A stretch of 64,000 nucleotides of DNA from Mytilus edulis (taxonomy: Eukaryota), in assembly GCF_963676685.1 (NCBI RefSeq), contig NC_092346.1:39494001-39558000 (forward strand). Reading direction: 5' to 3'. Below are positions 4,129 through 61,745 of the stretch, in pieces. Both the position numbers and the translations under genes were made by a program. A model generated the notes under the pieces. It made no database searches. It saw only the letters and a list, made by a program, of their open reading frames with translations, and had not been told where the DNA came from. Numbering within the stretch: position 1 is the stretch's first letter; every line of letters begins with the position of its first letter.

Positions 4129-4234
4129 AACTTTGGAAGGGAGATAATTTGTCCCGTCACCTTTACTTCCGTTATACCAGGTTGACAACAGCACCAAAAT
4201 ATATTTGCAGAACATTATAATATACATAGAAGGT
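4129..4234 (+). promoter_or_regulatory. Conserved upstream module and 5'-UTR exon donor of TRIM copy 1
   Basis: The block GGAAGGGAGATAA..TCCCGTCACC..TACTTCCGTTATACC recurs at 27462-27511 and 58161-58207. Each copy is followed by ATACATAGAAG|GT(G/A)AGT (donors at 4233, 27612, 58301). It contains GATA-like (AGATAA) and ETS-like (ACTTCCG) motifs. Confidence 0.55.
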
Positions 4235-5399
4235 GAGTTAGCGAAAATTTATCATGCCAAAGAAAATAGGTCCGTCAAAAGATTTACCTATATATTGTGC
4301 TACTTTTTTTTTTATTTTAATCGTATAAACATGTACCAAAAAATCAATTTTCTTCCTCTTTCACAAACTGAAGTGGTGAAAAGTTAGATTTGAAATTATT
4401 TGATAAGAGTTGAATATGTTTATTCAGTTAGGGAAAATTTACTTTCTTTCTGTGAATGTTGAATTATTTCGTTGCAACCGAAAACATGGAAGGTGCAAAA
4501 ATGAAGTAAACATGGAAAATTGTAATTAATTGTATATTCATATACTAGGAATGATAGTGTTTCCATTGATCTTCGATGAAAATATAACTGCCGTTGTATA
4601 AAGCTTCACTATTTATTGTCGATTTGTATGTAATTCCATACATATCTGTTGATCGCTAGTAATAGGAAATCAAATAATGGGAGGAACCTATATCAGTGCA
4701 TTTGATTTACCATCAGAACTTGTTTTAGTCTGACTATGTCTAATTAGATTTGGAAAGGAAGCAATCATAATAATGAAACAAAATATTAATAACTAATTTT
4801 TACAATTAAATTAAAAAAAAACAACATTAATTTACAGTGGCTATGGAGAGAATCGTAAATAATGTACGTTGTTGTTTTTAGATGTGTTGTTTTAATTAAA
4901 TATTAGTGTAATAAGCAAATCTTGAATTATCCCCAACAACTTGGGATACCTAAAAGTTATGTAACGCCCTCTTAGTGTATCTTTGAATCTATAGATTTGT
5001 TTTTTCTCTTTGTCTTTTTATGTATAGCGAGATTCATCAACTTACTTCAAAGTTAGGTATTTATCTACGCGTAAATACAAACAACACATTCATTACACAA
5101 ATATTTTACTCCATAAAACAAGTATAAAAAGTTACCGATTTAAAGATTACTTATTGAAATACGAATGGCGCAAATGAAAGAGTAAATTTCAGTGCAACTA
5201 AAATTCTTATGTCGGCACATATGAAATATTAGTAATTCTTCCAATTGTATTGGGATAAATAAAATGCCTTTTGATATTTTACTCCATTTTTTTTATTTTT
5301 ACAAAAGATGTCAATACTAATGTACTACAATTCATGCATGTACTTTAATATTAACCAACATTTATTGTATAAGGGATTCATATCTGTAGTTTAAATATT

Positions 5400-5880
5400 T
5401 AGAAACATCTTTGGTGCATTTTTGTCCTCATTGCTCTTTAACTTCGTACTATTTGGCCTTTTTAACTTTTTTGGATTCGAATTCACTGATGAGTCTTTTG
5501 AAGACGAAACGCGGGTCTGGTGTATATAAAAAATGTAATCCTGTGACTATGATGAGTTTATCTACAACCACTGGGTCGATGTCACTGGTGGTTGAGTTTT
5601 AATTCCCCGAGGGTATCATCAGCCCAGTAGTCAGCACTTCTGTGATGTCATGAATTTTCATTGATATGGTTAAATTTATAAATTAACTGTTTACAATATT
5701 TAGAATTTTTGAAATACTAAGGCTTTTCTACTTCAGGAATAGTTAAATTTAGCTGTATTTGGCAAAACTTTTAGAATTTTGGTCCTCAATGCTCTTCAAC
5801 TTCGTACGTCACTGGTTTGTAGACGAAACGCGCGTCTGACGTATATAAAAAAAAATCCTGGTATCTATGATGATTTATTT
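5400..5880 (+). mobile_element. Retrozyme-like repeat with two tandem type I hammerhead motifs
   Basis: CTGATGA-GTCT-tttga-AGAC-GAAA-Cgcgg-GTC at 5486-5517. A second, partly deleted motif (AGACGAAACGCGCGTCTGACGTA) lies ~320 bp downstream with the same flanks. Confidence 0.8.
5481..5525 (+). ncRNA. Hammerhead ribozyme motif (type I, minimal stem III)
   Basis: Intact CUGAUGA core, stem II GUCU/AGAC, GAAA and a GUC cleavage triplet. Stem I is weakened relative to the other copies. Confidence 0.7.
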
Positions 5881-6243
5881 AAACACATTCCAAACTACTA
5901 CACGACCAAATATACAAAAATATATAGGAATTAAATTTATGTATTGTCTTTCAGATAAAAATAAACAACACTTTTTTTCGAGATGCAAATAACCACGTAA
6001 CATTTCACTACAATTTATTGTGCTGAAATATATTTTGACTTATGGAAATACCAGTATAATAAAAAATATATTGATTATTCCATTTACAATAGGTTTGGAA
6101 AACATCTCCCTAGTTTCTATCATTTCGAGTGTTAGAAATCCCTAACCTTTAGGTTAGTTTAAACGAAGGTATCGTCACAATCATTTTCAACTTAAACAAA
6201 ATGCGGTATCTAATCTCCCACGAGCATTTACGTTTAATTTATA

Positions 6244-7795
6244 CTAGAACACACCCGTGAAATCGCTGGTCCGTGACTGAATTAAAGTATATAACTAAGT
6301 GTAAGCCTTATTTCAGCCTGGATATTTAGTATTGATATTGTCATCTGATAAGGTCATGCTGATTATAAGATGCACAGTTTTCTCTACTTTCAAAATCTTT
6401 CTGTTCGAAACCGTCGACCTGGAACTTATCAATTATTGGTATAATTAATTATTTGAAAAACAATAGGGCCTGGAATGGAGTATTTTTTTTATCAACAGCA
6501 TTGTCCAATATTTGTTATAAATAAAGTTGAATTCTTCGTTTCTCTGTTTTGCGTCATGCCGGCTAACAAATTGAAAACTGTACTTATATATACGCCTTAT
6601 TTTAAGTCTAGGTTTTTATATTCGTATTGTCATCGTTTAAAGTCCTACTGATTAAAATACTACAATAGGAAACAATGTAACAATTATAGAATTTAGTAAT
6701 GCCATCCCTGTGATTATTACCCGTGTATATAGCAAATCATAAATACACCGTTTGGTGGTGTGCCTGTCAAATGCGGAACGTACAGATAAGGTCCAGGTGG
6801 CACGGTAGTATTTTCTGGCCCATAAGAGATAATGATAGCCTTTTTAGAATTTTCACCTCTTTCCACACCGCAAAAAAATCTACATTTACAGTTAACTGAA
6901 GTACTTTCATTTTACTATTCAGAAATGAATTTGAATATGTATCATGACCGTTTACTTTTTTTACTATTTTTAAAAACCTATGGCCACTAGAACATTCATG
7001 GTGCAGTGAATACAAAATTAAAAAAAATCTCAAAAATTCATTTTCATCTGTATGTAAAATTATTTCATATTTTTCCACACCTGATTCATTTCTCCGTTTG
7101 GGAAAGTATGTTCAGATGATACTGTATTTTTTGTCCAATCACACTGTTTAGATACATTGTAGGGTACACAAAAGAGCAACTTAAATTCTGGAATGCAAAT
7201 ACTACCATGCCACCTTAAATAGGTTACATGTGGATATACTATTGGTATCGGTATCGGATTCGACCAAGAACTTGTTAATTATTGGCAATATTAATTATTG
7301 GGAAAATAAAAGGGTCTGAAGCGGTGTTATTTTAAATCAACACCATTGTCCTATATTAGCTATATATAAAGTTGAATTCTTAGATTTGTCGTATTTACCC
7401 CATGACAGCTGACAAATTGGATCTCGTTATTTAAGTATTAAGGACAATGATAGAATTTAGTAATGTCATCTCTTTGATTATGACCCGTGTATATAGCAAA
7501 TTCTAAATACAACGTTTAGTAGTGCGCCTATCAGATGCGGAACGTACATATGGTACAGATAAGGTATCTATAGGTTACATGTGAATATACTATTGGTATC
7601 GGTATCGGATTCTACCCGGAACTTGTTAATTATTGGCAATATTAATTATTGGGAAAACAAAAGGGTCTGAAGTGGTGTACTTTTTAATCAACGCCATTGT
7701 CCTATATTAGCTATATATAAAGTTGAATTCTTAGATTTGTCGTATTTACCCCATGACGGCTTACAAATTGGACCTCGTTATTTTAGTATTATAGA
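6244..7795 (-). mobile_element. Non-autonomous Helitron with internal tandem repeats
   Basis: On the - strand it begins A|TCTATAATACTAAAA and ends with a subterminal hairpin (ACCAGCGATTTCACGGGT) plus CTAG|T, which is the canonical TC...CTAG in an A|T target. Internal ~350-bp repeats are present. Confidence 0.8.
6796..7214. mobile_element. Nested MITE (Kolobok-like)
   Basis: TIRs GGTGGCACGGTAGTATTT / AAATACTACCATGCCACC, with right flank TTAA. It interrupts one Helitron repeat unit; the uninterrupted version is at ~7555-7580. Confidence 0.7.
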
Positions 7796-8591
7796 TATGT
7801 TTAACATTGTAAAAAATGTTTTGCATGTTATTTTCATTAACCTGGCACATTCTATGTAATAATTTAACAGAACGTATGAAAATAGTTCACTCTACTTATT
7901 TTTATGCGACCCATTGTATGCTTGTATTGCTGAAACACCACAAACAACAGTCTTTTAGACACTATTTAATCAAGTTTAAGACGGTGGAAGATTCCAAGAC
8001 TTCAATGACTTTTAGCACAATATATACATCGATACACCGAGACTACCGAAGCGAGTAAGATTCAAGGGGATAAGTTGGTAAACACAAATATTAAAAATGA
8101 TATATAGGGAGAGATATCTACAGTTGTAGTTAAAAATGAATTTTTATAGCCATAAAGTATCCACTTTTTATTTTCCCAAGTAAAACACCTTATTTCTGGG
8201 TTTACTTTTATCAAGAATTAGCAAAGCCAAATATTTGATAGCCAAGGATTTATATGAACAGAAAACGGGTAAGAGCTATATAATGAATGAAAACCTATAT
8301 GAATAACTAAATCCATCTAAGGTCAGCTTTGCCTGGGGGAGTTGAAACACATGAAAGGATTGTTATAAATCATAACAGTACCAAATTACTAACCTACGAA
8401 CTGATGATACCCTCGATGGCTGATATTTCACCAACAAAGGTATCGACCCAGTGCTGTAAAAATAAAGATAACAGAATATAAATTGTATGCGTTTGAAGCG
8501 TATAACATTAAGCTTCTAAACAAATTTCAGTAATTTTTGTTATATCAAAGTACGTTAAAACATATGTTTATAATTTGAATGTCTTTTCAGG

Positions 8592-10136
8592 ATGGCATCT
8601 AAGGTGCTTATATGTGACCCATGTTCTAGACTGAATAAATCCACTGAAGCCATAAAGTTTTGCACAGATTGTGACGATGCGCTATGTACAGATTGCACTA
8701 CTGCCCACAGTGCTCTAAAGATTACTATTTCTCATAACGTGGTTGATGCGTCTGTTTTAACTGGCCGTGCTTTCAATTTGAAAAAATACTGCAACGATCA
8801 TCAAGAAATGCCTTTCGAATTTTTCTGTACAGATCATGATTGCTTACTTTGCCGATCATGTATGGCCAATACACATCGTACTTGTGGTAAAATTTTACCG
8901 ATAGATGTCGCTGCAAAAGGGGTTAAGTCTTCAGTTATGTTTGATGATATGAGTAAGGATATTGCTGCTTTACGAGACTCATCAAAGGAACTAGTTGAGG
9001 ACAGACAGAGGAACCAAAAACGAGTCGGACAGACTAAAAAATTGATACTACAAAAGATAACAAAGTTTAGAAAAAAAATTAATAAGCATCTGGATAAATT
9101 GGAAAAGAAACTTTCCGCTGATGTGGAGGTTATGGAGAGGGAACTTGAGCAAAAAGCATCGAAAGGGCTAATTGAAGCAGAAACGAGAGCAAAAGAGATA
9201 GAATATATCTGGGAACAAGTTAAGATTCTTACTGAACACGGTTCTGAAAGTCAGATGCTTATCCTCCTAAATGCAGTAAGATTGGAAATTACAAAACAAT
9301 CAACAAATCTTAAGGAGCTGATGATGTCACTAGAAACAAATGGCTTCGATTTTGAAAATATAGATTTGGTATCTGCCATTAGCTCCATTGGATCAGTGAA
9401 AGGTACGTCCTTTCCATGTTCCGTTCCATACCAGCCTCCTAAACATATGCAGGCACAAATGCAACAAAATCATGAAGAAGCACCAACAAGGTCTGAGTTT
9501 GAAAAGAAAATTGATGTTCCCTCGGGCAGAATCACGTGTATAGCTGTTACTGATAATGGATTTATAATGTGTAATGATATGCTAGATAGCTTTAAAGATA
9601 ATGTGATAGCATACACGAAGACTGGCGAAAAGTATAAATCGTGCACTGTCTCCAATAGGGTGTATGGTATAGCTATTATACCAAACACAGAAGAAGCAGT
9701 TGTTAGTTTGCCTGAGGCCAAGATTATTCAATTTGTAAAGTTATCAAGCATGATGACTGGTAGACAACTTCAAGTTACCATTAAGGACATGTTTATGTAT
9801 GGCATTGCAGTCGTACGTGATACAATAATTGTAAGTGGGAGCTCTGGTAATGTTTATTTCATTGAGAAAATGAAAGGGAAATGTCTTAAAACTTTTACAA
9901 TTGGTACAGGTTCCATTTGTTCATTTCTGCCAATTATAAGCGCAGGATCTGCTGCTCCATTTAAAACCAGTGCAGCCCCTTCACTCACTAATGACTGGTC
10001 TGCATATACCGACGACTGGTCTACTAGTGCCGTCGACTCGTCTGCTATTCCTGTTGCAACAACACGCACAACCAACTGGGGCGGAAACAGTGCTGAAGAC
10101 TGGTCTGTAAGTGGTGCCGACGACTGGTCTGTTTAA
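8592..10136 (+). CDS. RING-less TRIM-like protein copy 1 (B-box1/B-box2/coiled-coil/partial propeller) fused to an RPSA-like DWS-repeat tail
   Basis: 514-aa ORF preceded by acceptor TTTCAG|G-ATG. It has CxxC..CxxC..CxxC..H and CxxH..CxxH..CxxC..H B-boxes and is colinear with the paralogs up to ...PIISA (9944). It then continues GSAAPFKTSAAPSLTNDWSAYTDDWSTS...TNWGGNSAEDWSVSGADDWSV. Confidence 0.85.
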   Translation: MASKVLICDPCSRLNKSTEAIKFCTDCDDALCTDCTTAHSALKITISHNVVDASVLTGRAFNLKKYCNDHQEMPFEFFCTDHDCLLCRSCMANTHRTCGKILPIDVAAKGVKSSVMFDDMSKDIAALRDSSKELVEDRQRNQKRVGQTKKLILQKITKFRKKINKHLDKLEKKLSADVEVMERELEQKASKGLIEAETRAKEIEYIWEQVKILTEHGSESQMLILLNAVRLEITKQSTNLKELMMSLETNGFDFENIDLVSAISSIGSVKGTSFPCSVPYQPPKHMQAQMQQNHEEAPTRSEFEKKIDVPSGRITCIAVTDNGFIMCNDMLDSFKDNVIAYTKTGEKYKSCTVSNRVYGIAIIPNTEEAVVSLPEAKIIQFVKLSSMMTGRQLQVTIKDMFMYGIAVVRDTIIVSGSSGNVYFIEKMKGKCLKTFTIGTGSICSFLPIISAGSAAPFKTSAAPSLTNDWSAYTDDWSTSAVDSSAIPVATTRTTNWGGNSAEDWSVSGADDWSV

Positions 10137-10348
10137 CTGTTTTTTTTGGTACGTATCGGTTACTAGTATTTGAATGTTTATAAAGGATCCTACCACCAGT
10201 TTTCAGCACTGCTTCCACACCAGTCGGTTCTGTTACTCCTGCCACAAAAGCACATTCAACCGACTGGTGTGGAAGCAGTGCTGAAAACTGGTGGTAGGAT
10301 CCTTTATAAACATTCAAATACTAGTAACCGATACGTACCAAAAAAAAA
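9947..10348 (+). other. Processed-mRNA-like insert resembling the 3' end of ribosomal protein SA (uS2/laminin receptor): coding tail, short UTR, poly(A)
   Basis: Acidic DWS repeats like the metazoan RPSA TEDWS tail. The distal part reads SVTPATKAHSTDWCGSSAENWW*, then ~40 nt, then A9 (10340-10348). It is flanked by CAGG (9943-9946 and 10349-10352, a possible TSD). TRIM homology resumes immediately after. Confidence 0.75.
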
Positions 10349-10351
10349 CAG
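10137..10351. repeat. Near-perfect inverted repeat (93/94-bp arms, 28-nt loop)
   Basis: 10137-10229 is the reverse complement of 10258-10351; the only difference is T8 vs A9. Confidence 0.97.
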
Positions 10352-10525
10352 GTGAAGTGGTATACTGACGTGAATATATCGATTACAAGAAATTCAAAGT
10401 TATGAAACTGGATAGAAGTTAACGTTCATCTTGTGATTTAATAATACAGTGGATATAATATAAGACTCAAAAGAAATTTGTATGTCGCCTGTGTCGATTC
10501 TGATGAATAAAATCACCTGTCAAAC
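10351..10525 (+). pseudogene. Decayed remnant of the displaced TRIM propeller C-terminus
   Basis: GEVVY*REYIDYKK...KLDRS*...DSK..LYVACVDSDE*NHLS aligns to paralog DEVLYCSEYSGNKK...KLDGTF...DSKRNVYVACYDFSELHRLT, with four stops plus indels. Confidence 0.85.
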
Positions 10526-11103
10526 ATTGGTATCGATTAGTATAGAAAAAAGTATGTACTATGAAATTTAGAGTGTGGTTACCTTTTCATAACTATCCAA
10601 TTTTGAACATATTTACAACTCAAGTAATCTTTTAATTGGTCTATAGATAGTTTATTTTGACTGACTTCTTGGATATCTATGTTAAATTTTTTAGAGGATT
10701 AATAATTATACTAGAATTTCTTTATGTACATCTGTTCAATATTATATCAATTTAATGCAATTAATGAGGTAGGTTGTTAAAAGCGTAATTGTGTTGCTCT
10801 GTTTGTTCATTTTGGGTTTTTTTTGTAAAAAAAAGTCTATTGTTCGGATATAAAAGCAACAATATTATTTTTCTTCTATGAAATAAGGTCGTGCATATAA
10901 TCAGGATTTTGATTTAAGTTAAACTCAATTGTCAAGTTGGTAAACTTTGTCGTTTCTTTTTGAAATTATGCATGTGAAAGGTAAATGTTTTTGTTCGTCC
11001 AAATTCTTAAACATATATATTTAGGGCTAGACTCGTCTATATATATTAGCGAGTATTATATATATATAAATAGATTAATATTAATATGTCAATATATATA
11101 TAT

Positions 11104-18290: not shown

Positions 18291-19187
18291 TGTTACAAAA
18301 CTTTGAATTTTTTAAATGAAATAAGGATTTTCTTATCCAGGAATAGCTGAACTAAGCACAACGTTTTTTTGGAATTGTGGGTGCTCAATGCTCTTCAACT
18401 TTGTACTTGTTTGGCTTTATTTCAATTTTGATCTGAGCGTGTTAAATTATACCCCTGGTATATACGTTTAATTCTTCTTTGGAATCTTTCAGAAAAAGTA
18501 GTAAAAACTGATGTACTAAAATATATACCAAAACCAAAACCAACAATATATTTAAGAACCGAAGCGCGTTTCAAATAAGCTTCTTAACAAGTTTTAGTTA
18601 TGTTGTCTTCAGGTATATCAAAGTACATCATCAAATTAAATGTAACTATTTAGTCTATCATTTCAAGATGGCATCTAATGTGTTGATATGTGACCCATGT
18701 TCTAGACTGAATAAATCCACGGACCCTTTAAAGTTTTGCACAGATTGTGACGATGTACTTTGTTCAGACTGCTCTACTGCTCACGGTGCTCTAAAGTTTA
18801 CTATTTCGCACAACGTTGTTGATGCGTCTGCATTAACTGACCGTGCATTCAATTTGAAACAAATCTGCAACGATCATGAAGAATTGCCTTTAGAGTTTTT
18901 CTGTTCAGATCACGATTCCTTTCTATGTTGATAATGTATGGCTAATGCCCATCTTACTTGTGGCAAGATTCTACCACTAGATGTCGCGGCAAAAGGAATA
19001 AAGTATACAGTCATGTTTGATGATATTTGTAAAGATATTGGTTCTTTATTGAAGTCGACAAAGGAGTTAGTAGAAGATAGAAAGAAGAACAAGAAACACG
19101 GAGGAAGGACCAAAGAATCGACACTACAAAAGATAACACAGTTCAGAAAAGATATTTATAAGCATCTCGACAAATTAAAAAAGAAAC

Positions 19188-21278
19188 TGTACGAATCACA
19201 TAAAGTTTAACTTAAGGGCGAAGAGATGAGTATGCGAGTTAGTTTGCATCATGTATCTATCTTTTATTCATAAAATCATATGGTCGCTAACAATCGCATA
19301 CTCATCTCTTCGCCCTTAAGTTAAACTTTATGTGATTCGTACAATTCTCAACTATAATCTGTCTAATAAAAAACAATGTGCATCCGTATGTAATCAAATA
19401 AAGTCTAGACGACGAAGCGCACGTCAAAGGCGAAACGTCACAAAACAGAAACGGGAAAATGTGTTGTTCAAAAGAGCGCAACGTTACATTAGCGCTTTCA
19501 TAAATAAATAGTAAAAACTGAGTTTCGTATTCTTACAAAAATAAATGAATACGTTAGTTAAACAATCAATTAATAATAAACTTATATTTCAAATTTGAAT
19601 ATTTCAAATCTTACACTCCCCACAATGAAATTACCAAATAATTTCTTAATACAGTTTGAAAAATGTAATACAATTTTGTCACCAATAAAAAATAGTTCTA
19701 TTTAGAACACTCGAGTAAGCATAGTTTATTTATAGGTCTCAAAATATGTGACTGACTAGTTTTGACCACGCAGCTACGGATGTGACCATCACGGCTCCTT
19801 GTGACCTCGACTATTCTACCTAAAGGCCATTGTCCTCTCTGTATACGTTCATCAGCAACTAAAACAATATCGTCTATTTCAACATCTCGTTCTTCCCTCT
19901 GCCATTTTCTTCTTTGATGTAGGGTTGGTAAGTATTCCCTCAACCAACGTTTCCAGAATTCATTCGCTAGGTGTTGTATTTGTTTCCACCAACGTTTTGC
20001 ATATATATCCTTTTTGTCAAACACACCTTGTGGTGTTGACGTGTTGCTCTTCATCAATAATAGCATATTTGGCGTTAAAACTGGTAAATCACGACAATCG
20101 TCACTTATTGCTGTTATCGGTCTATCATTCATAATACGCTCAGTTTCGGCCATAAATGTCAGTAATTGTTCATCGCTAAGTAGTTGTTGATTGATCAGTG
20201 CTTTAAAAATGTTCCTTGTTGAACGAATCATTCGTTCCCATGCACCACCGCGGTGACTTGCATATGGTGGATTAAATGTCCAAATAATGTCCTTGTGTAG
20301 CATATAATTTGATATAGTTGCTTTATTCCATTGTTCAATGTTTTTTCGAAGTTCGATTTCACCGCCAACGAAATTTGTTCCATTATCACTGTAGACTTTT
20401 CGGGAATGCCTCGTCTACTTGTAAAGCGTTGAAAGGCTGAAATAAAAGAATCCGTATTTAAACTGTGGGCTATTTCTATATGAACCGCTCTTGTTGTAAG
20501 GCAGGTAAAGAGGCATCCATATCTCTTAACAACTGACCGTCCAAGTTTAACGTTTAATGGACCAAAGTAGTCAACTCCGACAAAGGTAAAAGGAGGTTTG
20601 TCTGCAGTCATCTGTTCCTCGAGTAGGGGTGCCATCTGCTGTTTACAAAACGGGCCATGTTGTCGTTTGCATGGTACGCAACGATCGATAACTGTCTTCA
20701 CAGCACTGGATCCTTTCAATATCCAATATTTTTCACGAGAAGCTGCAAGCACCTGTTGTTTTCCCACGTGTCCCGTGGTTTCGTGATAATAACGGATGAT
20801 AAGCGTAGTCACGTGATGTTTGTTTGGCAGTATTACGGGACAAGTGCTTAAGTCATAATTTAGGCGCCCTTTTGATCGGATAAGTTCATTAACCAAAACA
20901 GTTAGTTTGCACCATGTATCTATCTTTTATTCATAAAATCATATGGTCGCTAACAATCGCATACTCATCTCTTCGCCCTTAAGTTAAACTTTATGTGATT
21001 CGTACAATTCTCAACTATAATCTGTCTAATAAAAAACAATGTGCATCCGTATGTAATCAAATAAAGTCTAGACGACGAAGCGCACGTCAAAGGCGAAACG
21101 TCACAAAACAGAAACGGGAAAATGTGTTGTTCAAAAGAGCGCAACGTTACATTAGCGCTTTCATAAATAAATAGTAAAAACTGAGTTTCGTATTCTTACA
21201 AAAATAAATGAATACGTTAGTTAAACAATTAATTAATAATAAACTTATATTTCAAATTTGAATATTTCAAATCTTACA
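19188..21278 (-). mobile_element. Internally deleted BEL/Pao LTR retrotransposon (integrase only)
   Basis: 364-bp LTRs at 19252-19615 and 20915-21278 (TGTA...TACA, one difference seen), PPT GGGGAG, PBS start TGGTGC, and a 5-bp TSD GAAAC (19183-19187 / 21279-21283). Confidence 0.95.
19698..20896 (-). pseudogene. BEL/Pao integrase (H2C2 zinc finger, DDE core, DUF5641-like C-terminus) with a 1-nt frameshift
   Basis: YHETTGH..CVPC, GVDYFGP, CLTTRAVHIE, SDNGTNF (after the frameshift at ~20397-20400), GGAWERMIRS, FWKRWLREYL, WPLGRI. Confidence 0.93.
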
Positions 21279-24136
21279 GAAACTATCCTCTGATGTTTAT
21301 ATAAAAGCGAGAGAACTGGATGAAAACGCATCCATAGGGCTATCTGAGGCAGTAACTAGGGAAAAAAATATAGAAGACATATGGGAACGAGTCAATTTTC
21401 TTTCAAAACATGGTTTCGAAAGTCAATTGCTTATCCTGCTGAATGAAGTAAGACCGAAAATTACCAAACAATTAATAAAATTTCAGGAAATGATTTTATC
21501 TCTAAAAAATGAATGGCTTGCATTTTGCACAGGTAGATTTGATATTTTCCATAAGTTTCATGGGATTAGTGAAGCCGACGTCTTCCCCCATGTTCAGTGT
21601 CATACCAGCCTCCTAAACATATGCAATCCAAGATACAACAAACACAAGTGAAGGTACCGATAAGGTTCGAGTTTGAAAAGAAAGATACCACAACCTTGAG
21701 TAGAATTTCATGTATAGCTGTAACTGACGACAATAGATTTCTTCTTTGTAATGACATGGTGAGTCCCTTTAAAAATAATATAAAAGCATGCACGGAGGAA
21801 GTTGAACATGTTCAACCGTGCACTATTTTCAATAGGGTATATGGTATAGCTATAGTACCACACACCGAAGAAGCAGTTATTAGTTTGGCTGACGTCAAGA
21901 TTATTCAATTCGTCAATACAGTAAGCCTGGGCCCTGGTAGACAAATTAAAATTGTTATTGAGGACAATTCCATTTATGGTATTGCAGTAGTTTGTGATTC
22001 CATTGTTGTCGGTGGTAGCTGTGGTAATGTTCATTTCATTGAGAAAATGAGAGGGAAATGTCTAAAAACGATTAAAATCGGTCCAGGTGCTATACGTTCC
22101 ATCGTGCCATTTATTAATGCTAAAGATGACGTAATATACTGCTGTGAACATAGCGGTAACAAGAAAGTGCATAGATTGAAACTGGATGGAAGTTTAATTT
22201 CAAATTGTGAGCTAGAAAATCCAATAGGAATGACATTAGATTCAAAAAGTAATGTTTGCGTCGAATCTTACGACTTTGGTGAACTATACAATCCATTGGG
22301 TATTACACTAGACTCAAAAGGAAATATTTACATCACGTGTTACGACTCTCATTGCCTACATCGTCTGTCATCAGACTGTAAAATCGATGATATTATGTTG
22401 AAGAAAGCGGATGGAATTGACCGACCAATGAGTGTTGCTTTCAACAAGACATTTAGCAAGTTGTACATTTCATACTCTGGTTCTGATAGAAGTGTTTTGA
22501 TTTTTAATTGCAAATGAACAATAAAAAAAAATTACAGATTTAAAAAATAAAATTATATTTAGCATAAATATTAGTTTTTTTAAGCATAAAAATTAATGAA
22601 AGTCCCAAAAGATTGAAAGAAGACTACAAATCATGAAATCCGACAAATAACTCCATTCAGTTTTCAAACTAAAATTTATCATGCAGGCGGTTAATATATA
22701 TTCTAGCATTTCCTTCTTTTTATCTGTTCTAAATAATAAAATAATTTTTTCACAATGTTGTCACTTATCGAAGACTTAGAAGTTCTTGTCTATTGTACTC
22801 GCTTTATTTTTGTTGTATTAATCCCATTGTCTGGATTTTTAACTATTAATTTAAAGTAGTTTTCTTTCCCTAACTTCAGCCGTGCATATTCTTGTTTTTG
22901 ACAAGATAGATAACTTTGTCGTTTTATTCTGCAATTATATATGTGATTGGCACATGGTTTGTCCGTAACTCATCGTACAAGTGTCAGGCTACAACTCATA
23001 TAATTATGTAGACTATGTGTACATTAAATATGAGTTGGGTAATATGTTATCAAGATTTCGATTTTGGTTTTTTTATTTCAGCATTTTGTCTTTTTTTGTG
23101 TATTTATGCATGTAACTTGTAAGCTACATGGTTTGTCAAGGTAACATTTACTTTTCAAGCTGTTTTATACGGTGTTTGTGTATATATTAAAGGAGTTTAT
23201 ATGATCAGGACTAAGATTTTTTTTTAATTTTACGCAGGAACTAAGCTGCAATCAACTTAACATGCATTTACGATAAATTTCATATTTAGTTTGTGTTTTC
23301 ACATCAGTCCAAAATTAACCAATATCAATTTATTTTACTGGATGTGACACTTGCTGTTAACTTTGCAAATATCTCAGTTGTTAGAAATGAATATCAACAA
23401 TACTTTTGAAGGGAGTGGGCATCGCATCTCGGTGAAGCAAATCTAAACTAGGGCCATTTTGTTTAGGATCTTAAACATTATCTTTCCAGAATTTCGTACA
23501 GCTAAAGTATGTTTCTACCTCACATTGGATTGGTCTGGTAACATCCTTTTGGCGTGGCTCAGTATTTATACATCCCACATTTGTTTTATTTAATTATTTG
23601 TATTCTTAATGATGTGCTTATATATTGTGTCTCTAGTGTGTCCACATGCTATTTTTGTTTTCCATTGTTGACATAGTTGTATGATTATATATATTTATTA
23701 AGATATTATAACACAATGTTGATCGTTATACCCAATTTTTACATTTTTACTTGTTATGTCATATTTACTTACATAGATAATCCATCATAGCGTTACACGT
23801 AGATGATTGTTTGCTTTGTATAAGTGTTTAAAGCATACTCAGAATAAACAGTTACAGTTTACAGACTTCTTACTGTAAATAACAAAGGGCAAAATCAAAA
23901 GCTCAAACACATCAAACGAATAGAAACAACTGTCTTATTCCCCACATAATACAATTGAGAATGGAAATGAGGAATGTGTCAAAGAGACAACAACCCGACC
24001 ATAGAACAGAAAACAGTAGGAGGTCACATAAACATGTATTTCTTTATTACAAAAATGGTGGATTAAACCTGATTTTATAGCTAGCGTAACTATAACTTGT
24101 ATGTCATTATATTGACGAGATATGTAGACTCTGGCA

Positions 24137-29831: not shown

Positions 29832-31505
29832 ATGGCATCTACTGTGTTAATATGTGACCCATGTTCCAGACTGAAGAAATCCTCTAAGGCCATAAAGTTT
29901 TGCACTGATTGCGACGATGCGCTATGCTCAGATTGCACAACTGTCCACAGCGCTCTGAAGATTACTAGTGGTCATCACGTGGTTGAAGTGTCTGATTTAA
30001 CCGGTCGTGCATTCAAGTTAAATAAATACTGTAACGATCATCAAGATATGCATTTAGAATTTTTCTGTGCAGATCATGATTGCTTACTATGCCGATCATG
30101 TATGGCCAACACCCATCGAACTTGTGGTAAGATTCTGCCAATAGATGTCGCGGCAAAAGGGATAAAGTCTTCAGTCATGCTTGATGATATAATTAAAGAT
30201 ATTGCTGTTTTACGCAAATCGACAAAGGAGTTAGTAGAGGATAGGCAGAGTAACAAGAACCGAGTCGGACAGTCTAAAGAACTAATACTACGAAAAATAA
30301 TAAAGTTCAGAAGTGATATAGATAAGCATCTGGACTATCTGGAAAACAAACTTTCCACTGGTGTTGAAGCTTTGGAGAAAGAACTTCACGAAAAAGCATC
30401 CACAGATCTGTCTGAAGCGGAAACAAAAGAAAAAGATATAGAAGAAATATGGGAACAAATCAATGTTCTTATTAAACAAGGTTCCGAAAGTCAGCTGCTT
30501 ATCCTGCTCAATGCAGTAAAGTCGGAAATTACCATACAGTCCAAAAATCTTCAAGAGTTTATTCTGTCTCAAGAAACGTATGGCATAGATTTTGAACAGG
30601 TAGATTTGACATCTGCAATAAGCTCTATCGGATTAGTTAAACGTACTACTTCTCCATGTTCAGTGTCATACCAGCTTCCTAAACATAAGCAAGCGCAAAA
30701 ACAACAAACACATGGCATTGTACCAACAAGGTTCGAGTTTGAAAAGAAAATTTGTGTACCCCCTGGCCGAATCACATGTATAGTTGTTACTGACGACAAT
30801 ATATTACTTCTGTGTAATGATAATCACTCAGCAAATAATTTAATGGCATACACAGAGGATGGAACTCAGGTTCAAACGTGCACTATTTCCAGTAGGATAT
30901 TTGGTATAGCTATAATACCACACACAGAAGAAGCAGTTGTTAGTTTGGCTGATGTCAAAATTATTCAATTCGTCAATATAGAAAGCCTGGTTCCTGGAAG
31001 ACAACTTCAAGTTATTATTGAGGACAGTTCCATTTATGGTATTGCAGTAGTTCGTGATACAATTATTGTCGGTGGTAGCTGTGGTAATGTGCATTTCATT
31101 GAGAAAATGAAAGGGAAATGTCTTAAATCGATTAAAATCGGTACAGGTACTATATCTTCCATCGTGCCATTTATAAGCGCCAAAGATGAAGTGCTATATT
31201 GCAGTGAATATAGCGGTAACAAGAAAGTTCATAGTTTGAAATTAGATGGAACCTTCATTTCAAATTGCGAGCTAGAAAATCCAATAGGAATGACATTAGA
31301 TTCAAAAAGAAATGTTTACGTCGCATGTTACGACTTTAGTGAATTACATCGCCTGACAGCAGATTGTGAAGTCGATAGTATTCTGTTAACGAAATCAGAT
31401 AGACTCGATAACCCTGTGAGTGTTGCGTTCAACAAGACATATAGTAAGCTGTACGTTTCAAACAGTGGATCCGATGAAAGTATTTTGGTTTTCAACTGCA
31501 AATGA
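29832..31505 (+). CDS. RING-less TRIM-like protein copy 3 (two B-boxes, coiled-coil, NHL-like beta-propeller), intact
   Basis: 557-aa single-exon ORF after TTTCAG|G-ATG, with B-box Cys/His patterns and propeller repeats (IFGIAI, IYGIAV, PIGMTLDSKRNVYV, PVSVAFN). Confidence 0.92.
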   Translation: MASTVLICDPCSRLKKSSKAIKFCTDCDDALCSDCTTVHSALKITSGHHVVEVSDLTGRAFKLNKYCNDHQDMHLEFFCADHDCLLCRSCMANTHRTCGKILPIDVAAKGIKSSVMLDDIIKDIAVLRKSTKELVEDRQSNKNRVGQSKELILRKIIKFRSDIDKHLDYLENKLSTGVEALEKELHEKASTDLSEAETKEKDIEEIWEQINVLIKQGSESQLLILLNAVKSEITIQSKNLQEFILSQETYGIDFEQVDLTSAISSIGLVKRTTSPCSVSYQLPKHKQAQKQQTHGIVPTRFEFEKKICVPPGRITCIVVTDDNILLLCNDNHSANNLMAYTEDGTQVQTCTISSRIFGIAIIPHTEEAVVSLADVKIIQFVNIESLVPGRQLQVIIEDSSIYGIAVVRDTIIVGGSCGNVHFIEKMKGKCLKSIKIGTGTISSIVPFISAKDEVLYCSEYSGNKKVHSLKLDGTFISNCELENPIGMTLDSKRNVYVACYDFSELHRLTADCEVDSILLTKSDRLDNPVSVAFNKTYSKLYVSNSGSDESILVFNCK

Positions 31506-60044: not shown

Positions 60045-61745
60045 ATGGCATCTAAGGCGCTGATTTGTGACCCATGTTCTAGATTAAAAAAATCATCTAG
60101 CGCCATAAAGTTCTGTACAGATTGCAACGATGCGCTATGTACAGATTGCACTTCTGTTCACAGCGCTCTAAAGATTACTAGTTCTCATCACGTGGTTGAT
60201 ACGTCTGATTTAACCGGTCGTACTTTCAAGTTAAAAAAATACTGCAACGATCATCAAGGTATGCCTTTAGAGTTTTTCTGTTCAGATCATGATTGCTTAC
60301 TGTGCCGATCATGTATGGCTAATACCCATCGTACTTGTGGTAAGATTCTACCATTAGATGTCGCGGCTAAAGGGATAAAGTCTTCAGTCATGTATGATGA
60401 TATTTATAAAGATATTTCTGCATTACGGAAGTCGACAAAGGAGTTAGTAGAAGATAGAGAGAAGAACAAGAAACACATAGGAAGGACCAAAGAATCGACA
60501 CTACAAAAGGTTAAAAAGTTTAGAAGTGATATTAATAAGCATCTCGATAAATTGGAAAAGAAAGTTGCGTCTGGTGTGAGTTTTTTGGAGAGCGAACTTG
60601 AAAAAAAAGCTTCGACCGATCTGTCTGAAGCGGAAACAAGAGATAAAAATATAGAAGATATATGGGAACAAGTCAATTTTCTTTCAAAACATGGTTCCGA
60701 AAGTCAAATGCTTATCCTGCTGAATGAAGTAAGACCAGAAATTATCAAACAATCAACAAATCTCCAGGAGATGATTCTGTCTCTAGATATGAATGGCATT
60801 GATTTTGAACAGGTCGATTTGATATCTTCCATAAGTTCCATTGGATTGGTGAAGCCGACGTCTTCTCCATGTTCTGTGTCATACCAGCCTCATAAACATC
60901 TACAAGCACAAATACAACAAACACAGGACAGAGAACCAACAAAGTTCGAGTTTGAAAAGAAAATTCCTGTACATTTGGGCAGAATCTCTTGTATAGCTGT
61001 AACTGACGACAATATATTACTTCTGTGTAATGACATGATTAGTAACTTTAAAGATAATGTAATAGCATGCAGAGAAACAGGTGTGCAGATTCAAGCATGT
61101 ACTATTTCCGAAAGGGTATTTGGTATAGCTATAATACCACATACAAACGAAGCAGTCGTTAGTTTGGTTGATGTCAAGATTATCCAATTTGTCAATTTAT
61201 CAAGCATGATGCTTGGTAGACAACTCCAGGTTACTATGGCGGACTACGGCATGTATGGTATTGCAGTAGTTCGTGATACAATAATTGTCGGTGGGACCTC
61301 TGGAAATGTGTACTTTATTGAGAAAACAAATGGAAAATGTCTTAAAACTGTTGAAATTGGTAAAGGCAATATAATTTCACTCATGCCATTTATAAGCGCT
61401 AAAGATGAAGTGCTATATTGCTCTGAATATTATGAATATAGCGCTAACACGAAAGTTCATAGCTTGAAACTGGATGGAACTTTTATTTCCAGTTGTGAAC
61501 TAAACAAACCATTTGGAATGACTTTAGATTCAAAAAGAAATGTTTACGTCACATGTTACAACTCTCATGAACTGCATCGTCTGTCCCCTGACCTAAAAGT
61601 CAATAAAATCCTGTTAAAGAAATCAGATGGAATTGACACACCATTGAGTGTTGCTTTCAACAATACATATAGTAAGCTGTACATTTCAAACAGTGGGTTT
61701 GATAAAAGTGTTTTGATTTTCAATTGCAAATGGAACAAACAATGA
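60045..61745 (+). CDS. RING-less TRIM-like protein copy 4 (two B-boxes, coiled-coil, NHL-like beta-propeller), intact
   Basis: 566-aa single-exon ORF after TTTCAG|G-ATG, colinear with copy 3. The stop is changed TGA>TGG, extending the C-terminus by WNKQ. Confidence 0.92.
   Translation: MASKALICDPCSRLKKSSSAIKFCTDCNDALCTDCTSVHSALKITSSHHVVDTSDLTGRTFKLKKYCNDHQGMPLEFFCSDHDCLLCRSCMANTHRTCGKILPLDVAAKGIKSSVMYDDIYKDISALRKSTKELVEDREKNKKHIGRTKESTLQKVKKFRSDINKHLDKLEKKVASGVSFLESELEKKASTDLSEAETRDKNIEDIWEQVNFLSKHGSESQMLILLNEVRPEIIKQSTNLQEMILSLDMNGIDFEQVDLISSISSIGLVKPTSSPCSVSYQPHKHLQAQIQQTQDREPTKFEFEKKIPVHLGRISCIAVTDDNILLLCNDMISNFKDNVIACRETGVQIQACTISERVFGIAIIPHTNEAVVSLVDVKIIQFVNLSSMMLGRQLQVTMADYGMYGIAVVRDTIIVGGTSGNVYFIEKTNGKCLKTVEIGKGNIISLMPFISAKDEVLYCSEYYEYSANTKVHSLKLDGTFISSCELNKPFGMTLDSKRNVYVTCYNSHELHRLSPDLKVNKILLKKSDGIDTPLSVAFNNTYSKLYISNSGFDKSVLIFNCKWNKQ

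What the first reader, a model, noticed from the sequence alone, without database searches (positions are those of the whole stretch)
8592..10525. TRIMCyp-like chimera: a TRIM B-box/coiled-coil protein fused in-frame to a retrocopied RPSA/laminin-receptor tail
Seen: copy 1 follows its paralogs to ...PIISA, then switches in-frame to ~60 aa of acidic DWS repeats (NDWSA, DDWST, NWGG, EDWSV, DDWSV). The insert ends in a short UTR plus A9, is bracketed by CAGG, and the displaced propeller sequence resumes after it. The ~451 codons upstream have no stop or frameshift, while the displaced ~58 codons carry four stops and indels. This asymmetry is expected if the fusion ORF stayed under selection after the insertion. 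Known: the metazoan RPSA (uS2, 37/67-kDa laminin receptor) C-terminus consists of TEDWS-like repeats, RPSA serves as a receptor for several viruses, and primate TRIMCyp arose by retrotransposition of a virus-binding host protein behind a TRIM coiled-coil. Inference: an invertebrate 'TRIM-LamR' that multimerises a host receptor tail as a decoy or sensor. Caveats: only about half the propeller remains, there is no RING, and the RPSA assignment is by eye.
Basis: partly seen in the sequence, partly recalled or inferred. Interest (0 to 1): 0.9.

Follow-up and report, generated by a model that had tools for sequence, protein, structure and literature searches.

The report
Expressed mussel TRIM-like/RPSA-tail chimera
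In a Mytilus mussel genome, one member of a large B-box/coiled-coil/NHL-propeller gene family lost the second half of its propeller to an in-frame insert copied from the end of the ribosomal protein gene RPSA (laminin receptor); the fused gene is spliced, transcribed and has stayed under purifying selection, but what the new tail does is untested.

Summary
ORF 8592-10136 (514 aa) is intact. It follows two tandem paralogs to ...PIISA, then reads an RPSA-type acidic Trp-repeat tail. The 402-bp insert (9947-10348) matches only the genome's own RPSA last exon and 3'UTR, at about 80% identity.

RNA contigs from three coded organisms span the junction. Two of them carry a 5'UTR exon spliced from 4.4 kb upstream, so they are mRNA.

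The displaced propeller remnant evolved neutrally (branch K 0.36, at least 3 stops, frameshifts). Over the same period the upstream 451 codons evolved at omega 0.30 (CI 0.20-0.45), and the tail kept its frame. The fusion has therefore been selected since it formed.

- The window's stop codon comes from a secondary, allele-specific inverted duplication (10128-10228). Three RNA data sets lack it, and a Mytilus edulis protein model also reads on past that stop. Without it the ORF is 534 aa.
- The A9 run lies at an internal A5 of the parental UTR, upstream of AATAAA. Retroposition is plausible but not shown.
- There is no RING, and three blades remain. A dimer model pairs them (ipSAE 0.56, control 0.00).

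The decoy or sensor function is untested. This is a new variant of a known kind, a domain-capture chimera.

The parts
4201..4232 (+). 3' end of the non-coding 5'UTR exon of the chimeric gene. A GTGAGT donor follows at 4233.
   Evidence: The unmatched 5' letters of RNA contigs X6 rec22 and X17 rec9/10 map here with 1 mismatch and 0 chance matches expected. The donor is read.
4233..8590 (+). Intron (GT...AG, 4358 nt) between the 5'UTR exon and the single coding exon.
   Evidence: The acceptor is ttttcAG at 8589-8590, and the ATG is at 8592.
8592..10136 (+). Chimeric ORF as it stands in this assembly: 514 aa, with TAA at 10134-10136.
   Evidence: The exact protein is on record in NCBI/UniRef as a predicted protein.
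8613..8882 (+). Two B-box zinc fingers (residues 8-41 and 65-97). There is no RING upstream.
   Evidence: Pfam PF22586 and PF00643, 45 bits. All Cys/His ligands are invariant across 11 family members, this copy included.
8928..9329 (+). Coiled coil (residues 113-246).
   Evidence: AF2 helices 113-216 and 219-246, pLDDT about 57-73. The paralog model shows the same.
9528..9932 (+). Retained half of the NHL-type beta-propeller: 13 strands, about three blades plus one strand (residues 313-447).
   Evidence: The AF2 model of this copy has pLDDT 77-90 here. Paralog c2 has 24 strands, i.e. six blades, with best TMt 0.74-0.77 to the NHL domains of TRIM2, TRIM71 and Brat.
9943..9946 (+). CAGG at the 5' junction: a possible target-site duplication, or microhomology with parental GCAGCAGGAAC.
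9947..10127 (+). RPSA-derived tail, unit A, in RPSA's reading frame (...SAAPFKTSAAPSLTNDWS...NWGGNSAEDWSVSGADDW).
   Evidence: blastn against the parental exon: 79.4% over 97 nt (E 2e-21) and 73% over 52 nt. blastp tail against the RPSA C-terminus: E 5e-17.
10128..10228 (+). Secondary inverted duplication, a reverse-complement copy of 10258-10347. It brings in the TAA at 10134 and makes a 90-bp perfect hairpin with the downstream arm. It is allele-specific.
   Evidence: Inverted repeat with 100% complementarity. RNA fold -169 kcal/mol, z -27. Skipped in X6, X10 and X17; its left junction is present in X4 rec17. It is absent from M. edulis protein P0002.
10229..10298 (+). RPSA-derived tail, unit B (SVTPATKAHSTDWCGSSAENWW*). 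It is coding in alleles without the hairpin (534-aa ORF) and untranslated in this assembly.
   Evidence: P0002 ends ...DDWSVTPATKAHSPDWYGSSAENW.
10299..10348 (+). RPSA 3'UTR-derived stretch ending in A9 (10340-10348).
   Evidence: Aligned to the parental UTR with indels. A9 falls on parental GGTACAAAAAC, upstream of the parental AATAAA. The A-run is A7-A9 among runs.
10349..10545 (+). Displaced, decayed remnant of propeller blades 4-5, now 3'UTR. It begins with the second CAGG (10349-10352).
   Evidence: RNA contigs run on to 10603-10627.

Best explanation
This is a real, spliced, transcribed and selectively maintained chimeric gene of Mytilus mussels.

Origin (shown, except as marked)
- Soon after this copy split from its tandem paralogs, about 300 bp from the 3' end of the RPSA gene or mRNA was inserted in frame into the single coding exon of a RING-less B-box/B-box/coiled-coil/NHL-propeller gene. 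The piece comprises the last 45 codons plus about 50 nt of 3'UTR.
- The insertion point lies after blade 3 of the six-bladed propeller.
- The last repeat unit was duplicated early, or was already double in the source. Which of the two is unresolved.
- RNA-mediated origin is the likelier route but is not proven.

Product
- The protein is 534 aa in most alleles and 514 aa in this assembly, where a later inverted duplication adds an early stop and a 90-bp hairpin.
- It keeps the zinc fingers, the coiled coil and three blades, and ends in a disordered acidic tail with five to seven (D/E/N)W(S/G) repeats.

How it works (inferred)
- The coiled coil dimerises the protein.
- The two three-blade halves may close into one pseudo-six-bladed ring.
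- The dimer then displays two copies of the RPSA repeat tail. In RPSA this is one of the laminin-binding stretches. The tail would give a member of a lineage-expanded, probably recognition-type family a new binding specificity.
For: Identity of the parts
- Domains and models.
- RPSA origin: the only genomic match is RPSA's last exon and UTR, at 79-80% identity with E 1e-21 to 1e-28, in RPSA's frame.

Transcription and splicing
- X6 contig rec22 (1965 nt) covers 8589-10127 and 10229-10603 with 3 differences. It begins with 53 nt that map to 4201-4232, next to a GTGAGT donor.
- X17, a declared RNA-Seq library, has a 1443-nt contig across the junction and the same 5' exon.
- X10 spans the junction too.
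- In X6 and X10 the RPSA contigs have depth about 2200 against 5-17 for this gene, which marks those two as RNA libraries.
- The stretch is held by 20 runs of 14 studies under four organism labels.
- An M. edulis protein model carries the same junction.

Selection after the insertion
- The remnant branch has K 0.36, against 0.08 and 0.15 for the paralogs over the same columns. That is about equal to the c1 branch dS of 0.31, so the insertion is about as old as the copy itself.
- Over that time the upstream 449 codons have dN 0.091 and dS 0.307, giving omega 0.295 (bootstrap CI 0.20-0.45). In the half propeller alone omega is 0.31.
- Between two chimeric alleles (window against X17) there are 14 synonymous and 18 non-synonymous differences over 237 synonymous and 882 non-synonymous sites. 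That gives omega about 0.35 (binomial p 0.003, or 0.04 with a transition-biased expectation).
- The remnant has about 6 disabling lesions in 195 nt. The 1353-nt upstream ORF and the 249-nt tail, of the same age, have none. All tail length changes are in frame: +93, +21, +3 and -3 nt.

Half propeller
- The homodimer model has ipSAE 0.56 against a best control of 0.00. Runs agree in at least 55% of contacts, and the partner pLDDT is at least 76.
- Blade 1 of one copy lies against blade 3 of the other.
- The tool's mark was reached by 21 of 30 solved homodimers and 0 of 23 solved monomers. Its verdict is that the model supports binding but does not show it.
Against: - No protein-level evidence exists, and the contigs give no expression level or condition.
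- The tail is the fastest-changing part. Between the window and X17 I estimate about 8% divergence (rec11 has 46 differences, 37 are listed, and I assigned the unlisted 9 to the tail), against 2.9% in the TRIM part. The two shown pieces 3' of the hairpin differ by 7 of 83 nt (10229-10311) and 7 of 338 nt (10287-10624).
- Individual Trp residues differ among alleles: DSS here against DWS in M. edulis, and W469L in X17.
- Units A and B compared with each other give omega about 1.2 on 31 codons.
- The reference allele truncates the last 20 residues.
- The M. edulis gene model starts in the +1 frame of 9472-9504 and then shifts to the main frame. That implies a 1-nt length difference in an A-run in that assembly, either a real frameshift or a homopolymer error.
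- No tailed ortholog of 283-900 aa is annotated in M. trossulus, M. californianus, M. coruscus or M. galloprovincialis. This sits oddly with an old insertion unless those genes are unannotated, fragmented or lost.
- The dimer pass may reflect the model's memory of intact propellers.
- Pfam does not call 40S_SA_C on the tail.
Confidence: 0.75

Rival explanations
1. The N-terminal module is what selection keeps, and the RPSA tail is a tolerated passenger. The B-box/coiled-coil/half-propeller protein would work as a truncated partner or dominant-negative regulator of its full-length paralogs through the coiled coil. The insert would merely supply a stop codon and a 3' end.
For: - The tail diverges about three times faster than the TRIM part between alleles (my estimate).
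- Trp positions are not fixed.
- Units A and B compared with each other give omega about 1.2.
- The window allele loses 20 tail residues to the inverted duplication.
- Truncated family members exist elsewhere in the genome (489- and 487-aa forms).
Against: - The tail has no stop or frameshift over 249 nt. The same-age remnant next to it has about 6 lesions in 195 nt, so about 7-8 would be expected in the tail, with P(0) near 5e-4.
- All indels are multiples of 3.
- Unit B against the parent has dN 0.12 and dS 0.60.
- Three RNA alleles and the M. edulis model read through to RPSA's own stop region.
Confidence: 0.2
2. Rival on origin: the insert was not a retrocopy. It was captured at the DNA level, or by template switching during double-strand-break repair, from the RPSA locus or a cDNA, guided by microhomology.
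For: - The 5' junction shares GCAGG with the parental GCAGCAGGAAC.
- A9 sits on an internal A5 of the parental UTR, about 25 nt upstream of the parental AATAAA. An RPSA mRNA contig in X6 runs 57 nt past the stop, beyond that A5.
- The direct repeat is only 4 bp.
- No other RPSA retrocopy is found in this genome: PF16122 gives one hit, the gene itself.
- The locus later underwent a template-switch-like inverted duplication flanked by TCTGTT.
Against: - The fragment is 3'-terminal (end of the CDS plus UTR), ends in an A-run and is flanked by a short direct repeat. That is the pattern of a 5'-truncated retrocopy.
- RPSA mRNA is among the most abundant templates, with depth about 2200 against 5-17 for this gene.
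- 5' microhomology is also usual for truncated LINE-mediated insertions (my own knowledge).
Confidence: 0.4
3. The gene was disabled by the insertion and is a transcribed pseudogene. The open frame is chance, and the transcripts are leftovers of an active promoter.
For: - Half of the propeller is lost.
- The M. edulis model suggests a frameshift in one assembly.
- No tailed ortholog is annotated in four other Mytilus proteomes.
- Pseudogenised family members are common, one of them inside this window.
Against: - The c1 branch omega is 0.295 (CI 0.20-0.45, maximum of 2000 bootstraps 0.56), while the remnant shows the insertion spans nearly the whole branch.
- At the remnant's lesion rate about 40-50 lesions would be expected in the 1.6-kb ORF. 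None is seen.
- All zinc ligands are intact.
- Differences between alleles are enriched for synonymous changes.
Confidence: 0.05
4. The junction or the hairpin is an assembly artefact.
For: A perfect 90-nt palindrome is a classic long-read or assembly artefact. Contigs break at it.
Against: - The junction at 9946/9947 is crossed by independent contigs of four runs, and by an M. edulis protein model from another assembly.
- The left junction of the inverted duplication is crossed by X4 rec17 (9863-10166, 0 differences). X4 may, however, be the sample behind the assembly.
Confidence: 0.03

Closest known systems
TRIMCyp (TRIM5-cyclophilin A fusions of owl monkeys and macaques)
   Same: - A B-box/coiled-coil scaffold whose C-terminal recognition domain is displaced by sequence copied from an abundant host gene.
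- The chimera is transcribed and conserved.
- The donor protein is one that pathogens bind. RPSA is a receptor for Sindbis and dengue viruses (PMC12026610), and the shrimp homologue is an attachment receptor for WSSV (PMC4892510).
   Different: - There is no RING here, so no E3 module.
- The captured piece is a 45-residue disordered repeat tail (83 residues after internal duplication), not a whole folded domain.
- It entered a coding exon directly rather than being spliced in from an intron or UTR.
- Half of the old domain is kept.
- Retroposition is not demonstrated.
- No antiviral or binding data exist.
TRIM-NHL proteins (TRIM2, TRIM3, TRIM32, TRIM71/LIN-41, Brat, Thin)
   Same: The parental family has B-box, coiled coil and a six-bladed NHL-type propeller. 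Paralog c2 gives TMt 0.74-0.77 to the TRIM2, TRIM71 and Brat NHL domains. It also gives weak Pfam NHL hits.
   Different: - The mussel family lacks the RING and has two B-boxes at the very N-terminus.
- It is expanded to at least 95 scored copies, from 2047 first-look candidates.
- This member has only three blades.
RPSA / uS2 / 37LRP-67LR C-terminal extension (Pfam 40S_SA_C)
   Same: The tail derives from the last 45 codons of the species' own RPSA and keeps its frame and its acidic (D/E)W(S/G) repeats. Such TEDWS-like repeats are listed as one of three laminin-binding sites of the human protein (PMC12026610).
   Different: - Only the repeat end is present. The ribosomal S2 core, peptide G and the 209-229 site are absent.
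- The repeat number is raised and varies between alleles.
- Pfam does not call the domain on the chimera.
Chimeric (retro)genes in general, such as jingwei in Drosophila and chimeric retrogenes of rice (PMC6881317; review PMC5470649)
   Same: A new gene formed by joining a piece of one gene to the exons and promoter of another, followed by purifying selection.
   Different: Here the captured piece is a short 3'-terminal fragment rather than a whole coding sequence, and it lands inside a domain.

Membership tests
TRIM / RBCC family | N-terminal RING finger | tested here: not met
   There is no RING hit in Pfam for this copy or its paralogs. B-box 1 starts at residue 8.
TRIM / RBCC family | B-box zinc finger(s) | tested here: met
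   PF00643 at 45.1 bits (cut-off 24.1) on residues 65-97. PF22586 on residues 8-41 is below its cut-off (23.9 against 27). All Cys/His ligands are invariant.
TRIM / RBCC family | Coiled coil after the B-boxes | tested here: met
   AF2 gives continuous helices at 113-216 and 219-246 in both models, with moderate pLDDT of 57-78.
TRIM-NHL subfamily | Complete six-bladed NHL propeller at the C-terminus | tested here: not met
   The paralogs have it: 24 strands, pLDDT about 90, TMt 0.77 to the TRIM2 NHL domain. This copy keeps only strands 313-447, about three blades.
Processed retrocopy / chimeric retrogene | Loss of parental introns | not testable with these tools
   The insert corresponds to part of a single parental exon, the last one, which starts at L005:~1770 on the minus strand.
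Processed retrocopy / chimeric retrogene | Poly(A) tail at the parental polyadenylation site | tested here: not met
   A9 aligns with the internal GGTACAAAAAC of the parental UTR. The parental AATAAA lies about 25 nt further 3', and an RPSA mRNA contig runs past the A5. Internal priming or an alternative site is not excluded.
Processed retrocopy / chimeric retrogene | Target-site duplication | tested here: inconclusive
   There is a 4-bp CAGG on both sides. The 5' copy can equally be parental sequence, GCAGCAGGAAC.
RPSA C-terminal domain (PF16122, 40S_SA_C) | Match to the family profile | tested here: not met
   No PF16122 hit on the 514-aa protein at E up to 0.1. The parental exon scores 33.7 bits. 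Only the repeat end of the domain is present.
RPSA C-terminal domain (PF16122, 40S_SA_C) | Descent from the RPSA gene (sequence homology, same frame) | tested here: met
TRIMCyp-type restriction factor | The captured domain binds a pathogen component and the fusion restricts infection | not testable with these tools
   No binding or infection data exist. Neither paper read here places virus binding on the repeat tail.

The most novel reading that the evidence does not exclude
This would be an invertebrate, RING-less counterpart of TRIMCyp that arose independently. A coiled-coil dimer, whose two half propellers close into one ring, displays multimerised RPSA repeat tails. These would act as an intracellular or released decoy or sensor for pathogens or ligands that use RPSA/LamR as an attachment factor. 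In this assembly's allele the 90-bp 3'UTR hairpin would add a dsRNA-dependent layer of regulation.
Probability: 0.12. Interest if true: 0.85.

Novelty: new variant of a known kind. Interest (0 to 1): 0.62.

Why it matters
It is a clean natural example of how a lineage-expanded recognition-type gene family gains a new specificity by capturing a piece of an abundant host gene.

- The locus carries its own internal control. The displaced remnant is the same age as the fusion and adjacent to it, and it decayed neutrally. Selection on the fusion can therefore be read directly from one locus.
- It raises a testable structural question: can three NHL blades pair into a six-bladed ring?
- It raises a testable functional question: does a dimeric display of the RPSA acidic Trp repeats bind laminin-like ligands or pathogen proteins? 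RPSA homologues are virus attachment factors in vertebrates and in shrimp.
- For mussel immunity and pangenome work, it is a candidate lineage-restricted gene with segregating structural alleles (with or without the hairpin, and with variable repeat number).

Tried and rejected
I could not fetch the M. edulis contig behind CAG2254168.1, so its apparent 1-nt frameshift stays unresolved.
- A protein search with the tail alone (residues 445-514) returned nothing at E up to 0.01. The tail is short and compositionally biased, and the length window shuts out the 239-aa M. edulis model, so this blank means little.
- A search with residues 300-514 found only paralog-level relatives, at most 70% identical and none with a DWS tail. 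This is a blank for annotated proteins of 283-900 aa only.
- Pfam gives no 40S_SA_C call on the chimera.
- Literature searches found no report of a TRIM-RPSA fusion, nor a usable description of the mussel B-box/NHL expansion.
- The search of earlier findings by words found nothing.
- MAFFT alignment of the whole insert against the parental exon was misleading because of the internal duplication and the palindrome. I replaced it with local alignments.
- Transposon or MITE origin of the insert is rejected. Its only genomic relative is RPSA.
- Gene conversion from paralogs as the reason for the intact ORF is rejected. The nearest paralogs differ by 20% in DNA, with dS about 0.5.
- The hairpin-free ORF (534 aa) was assembled and translated only inside a script, from two window references. 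It was not sent to any search or fold tool. The fold and the complex used the window's own 514-aa ORF.
- The spliced mRNA (5' exon plus coding exon) was not joined or searched.
Full report
**What is in the sequence**

The window is G000:C3:39494001-39558000 of a 1.37-Gb genome. A cluster mate of the encoded protein is an M. edulis entry, and all close relatives are from Mytilus.

ORF 8592-10136 (+) encodes 514 aa without interruption. Pfam finds two B-boxes and no RING. The two tandem paralogs, at 29832-31505 (557 aa) and 60045-61745 (566 aa), carry weak NHL/SGL propeller hits. The three proteins align from residue 1 to residue 451 (PIISA / PFISA). After that this copy reads GSAAPFKTSAAPSLTNDWSAYTDDWSTSAVDSSAIPVATTRTTNWGGNSAEDWSVSGADDWSV*.

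**The insert comes from RPSA**

- A whole-genome DNA search with 9947-10348 finds only the locus itself and G000:C9:75425599-75425690 (E 2e-12).
- That place is the 3' end of the only gene with a 40S_SA_C exon (33.7 bits) and, 1 kb away, a Ribosomal_S2 exon.
- The parental last exon ends ...GTAAPFDLKAPAPTEDWSASADDWSATPAPPAPTTDWGGSSAENW*, followed by its 3'UTR.
- Local alignments give 79.4% over 97 nt (E 2e-21), 79.5% over 127 nt including the stop region and 45 nt of UTR (E 6.5e-28), and 73% over 52 nt at the 5' start. All are in RPSA's frame.
- Two stretches of the insert, unit A (10041-10104) and unit B (10229-10292), map to the same parental stretch and are 77% identical to each other. This is an old internal tandem duplication.

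**A secondary rearrangement explains the stop codon**

A perfect 90-nt inverted repeat (10140-10229 / 10258-10347, 28-nt loop) lies in the insert. As RNA it folds at -169 kcal/mol, z -27. Its left arm is a reverse-complement copy inserted between two TCTGTT hexamers, and it brings in the TAA at 10134.

- The M. edulis protein CAG2254168.1 has the same junction (PIISAGSAAPFK) but reads on...AEDWSASADDWSVTPATKAHSPDWYGSSAENW.
- Contigs of three runs skip 10128-10228 (X6 and X10) or replace 10114-10228 by 11 nt (X17).
- X4 crosses the left junction of the duplication with no difference (rec17, 9863-10166). X4 may be the sample behind the assembly.
- Without the duplication the ORF is 534 aa and ends at RPSA's own stop region (computed in a script only).
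- An earlier scan note (s1-832489) says the same about the duplication and the stop. I had seen it independently.

**Transcription and splicing**

The stretch 9300-10560 is held by 20 runs of 14 studies under four organism codes. I laid four runs on 8200-11000.

- X6 has one 1965-nt contig covering 8589-10127 and 10229-10603 with three differences. Its first 53 letters do not match the DNA upstream of 8589. They map to 4201-4230 with one mismatch and no chance matches expected, directly before a GTGAGT donor.
- This gives an intron at 4233-8590 with acceptor AG at 8589-8590.
- X17, a declared RNA-Seq library, has a 1443-nt contig over 8786-10113 and 10229-10311, and short contigs with the same 5' exon.
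- X10 covers 9332-10127 and 10229-10452.
- In X6 and X10 the contigs of RPSA itself have depth about 2200, against 5-17 for this gene. That marks both as RNA libraries.
- The chimera is therefore a spliced mRNA in three data sets. The decayed remnant is part of its 3'UTR, at least to 10603-10627.
- Contigs cannot give expression levels or transcript ends.

**Selection**

The displaced propeller resumes at 10349. It can be recognised for about 195 nt, with at least 3-4 stops and at least 2 net frameshifts.

- On a three-taxon tree the remnant's branch is 0.36 substitutions per site. The paralogs over the same columns have 0.08 and 0.15.
- The synonymous length of this copy's branch upstream is 0.31 (CI 0.22-0.40).
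- The remnant has therefore been neutral for essentially the whole life of this copy. The insertion is about as old as the duplication that made the copy.
- Over that time the upstream 449 codons have dN 0.091, giving omega 0.295 (bootstrap CI 0.20-0.45). This resembles the paralogs. Omega is 0.22 in the B-boxes, 0.30 in the coiled coil and 0.31 in the retained half propeller.
- A second, independent comparison uses two chimeric alleles, the window and X17. It gives 14 synonymous and 18 non-synonymous differences over 237 and 882 sites, so omega is about 0.35. The binomial p is 0.003, or 0.04 if 28% synonymous changes are expected. The list of differences is truncated by the tool, but the part upstream of 9947 looks complete.
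- At the remnant's lesion rate, about 40-50 disabling lesions would be expected in the 1.6-kb ORF. None is there.

The tail is less clear-cut.

- Against constraint: it is the fastest-changing part between alleles, individual Trp residues vary, and units A and B compared with each other give omega about 1.2 on 31 codons.
- For constraint: it has no stop or frameshift in 249 nt, all its length changes are multiples of three (+93, +21, +3, -3), and unit B against the parent has dN 0.12 and dS 0.60.
- I read this as weak constraint on sequence but real constraint on being translated.

**Structure**

- AF2 with an 11-member family alignment gives a six-bladed propeller for paralog c2: 24 strands over residues 301-556, pLDDT about 90.
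- Foldseek's best target-normalised matches are the NHL domains of TRIM2 (0.77), TRIM71 (0.75) and Brat (0.74).
- The chimera's model has the coiled coil at 113-246, strands at 313-447 (three blades plus one strand, pLDDT 77-90), and a tail with pLDDT under 35.
- Two copies of residues 303-452 are modelled as a symmetric pair, with blade 1 of one against blade 3 of the other. ipSAE is 0.56 with a best control of 0.00. Runs agree in at least 55% of contacts, and the partner pLDDT is at least 76.
- The tool's mark was reached by 21 of 30 solved homodimers and 0 of 23 solved monomers. Its verdict is 'supports binding; does not show it', and a pass may come from memory of intact propellers.

**Origin**

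*In favour of retroposition*
- The fragment is the 3' end of a very abundant mRNA.
- It ends in an A-run and is flanked by CAGG.

*Against it, or neutral*
- The fragment lies in one parental exon, so intron loss cannot be scored.
- A9 aligns with an internal A5 of the parental UTR, upstream of AATAAA, and an RPSA mRNA contig runs past it.
- The 5' CAGG is also parental sequence.
- No other RPSA retrocopy is detected in the genome.

I put RNA-mediated origin at roughly 60%.

**Comparison with what is known**

- The architecture is that of a RING-less TRIM-like protein. It fails the RING criterion for TRIM membership, and this copy fails the complete-propeller criterion for TRIM-NHL.
- The logic resembles TRIMCyp in that a B-box/coiled-coil scaffold captures a piece of a host protein that pathogens bind.
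- The captured piece, however, is a disordered repeat tail, half of the old domain is kept, there is no E3 module, and no binding or restriction data exist.
- A review lists the TEDWS-like repeats as one of three laminin-binding sites and names RPSA as a receptor for Sindbis and dengue viruses (PMC12026610).
- Shrimp Lamr is an attachment receptor for WSSV (PMC4892510). Neither paper places virus binding on the repeat tail.
- I found no paper describing this fusion. The protein is on record only as an unnamed prediction.

**Open points**

- The M. edulis model begins in the +1 frame of 9472-9504 and then switches to the main frame. That assembly therefore differs by 1 nt in an A-run near 9500-9510. 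The three RNA contigs and X4 show no such change.
- No tailed ortholog of 283-900 aa is annotated in four other Mytilus proteomes. The taxonomic spread of the fusion is therefore unknown, despite its inferred age.

**Verdict**

The chimera is real, expressed and selectively maintained. The retrocopy mechanism and the decoy function remain hypotheses.

Noticed in passing
window 18668-19207 and 21588-22517 (+), with 19698-20896 (-) between them: A fourth copy of the same B-box/NHL family lies between copy 1 and copy 2. Its N-terminal part (71% identical to copy 1, residues 1-180) carries a TGA and a TAA. Its propeller part is a separate 306-aa open frame with an NHL hit. Between them, on the other strand, are retroelement ORFs (Integrase_H2C2, zf-H2C2, DUF5641). 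It looks like a family member split by an LTR-type retrotransposon.
   Followed up: partly
whole genome G000: The RING-less B-box/coiled-coil/NHL family is very large. There are 95 scored matches to copy 1 out of 2047 first-look candidates, mostly intronless open frames of 545-605 aa. They sit in tandem clusters on C3, C5, C6, C7 and C14, with scattered pseudogenes.
   Followed up: no
G000:C2:185958-186488 (+) (L006/L007): There is a second Ribosomal_S2 (PF00318) match in one uninterrupted 241-aa open frame that covers the whole profile without introns. It may be a mitochondrial-type or bacterial-type uS2. It has no 40S_SA_C tail and is not the parent of the insert.
   Followed up: no
window 9472-9510: The M. 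edulis gene model CAG2254168.1 (239 aa) starts at the out-of-frame ATG at 9472 and reads 11 residues in the +1 frame before joining the main frame. That assembly therefore has one more base in the A-run near 9500-9510. This is either a real frameshift allele or a homopolymer error.
   Followed up: partly
window 10023-10024 and 10114-10127: The number of repeat units in the tail varies between alleles. X17 has 21 extra bases (one more DWS unit) after 10023 and 3 fewer near 10114. The A-run at 10340-10348 is A7 to A9 among the runs.
   Followed up: partly
window 8388-8481 and 10550-10643: In the DNA run X4 these bins have summed contig depths of about 4900 and 137, against about 5-10 elsewhere. 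They are high-copy repeats in the intron just upstream of the acceptor and just beyond the remnant. The second may be why the RNA contigs end at 10603-10627.
   Followed up: no
G000:C9:75425599-75428490 (-) (L005, L008): RPSA appears to be single-copy, with no other processed copies detectable by PF16122 or by DNA search. Mammals, by contrast, have many RPSA pseudogenes (my own knowledge).
   Followed up: partly
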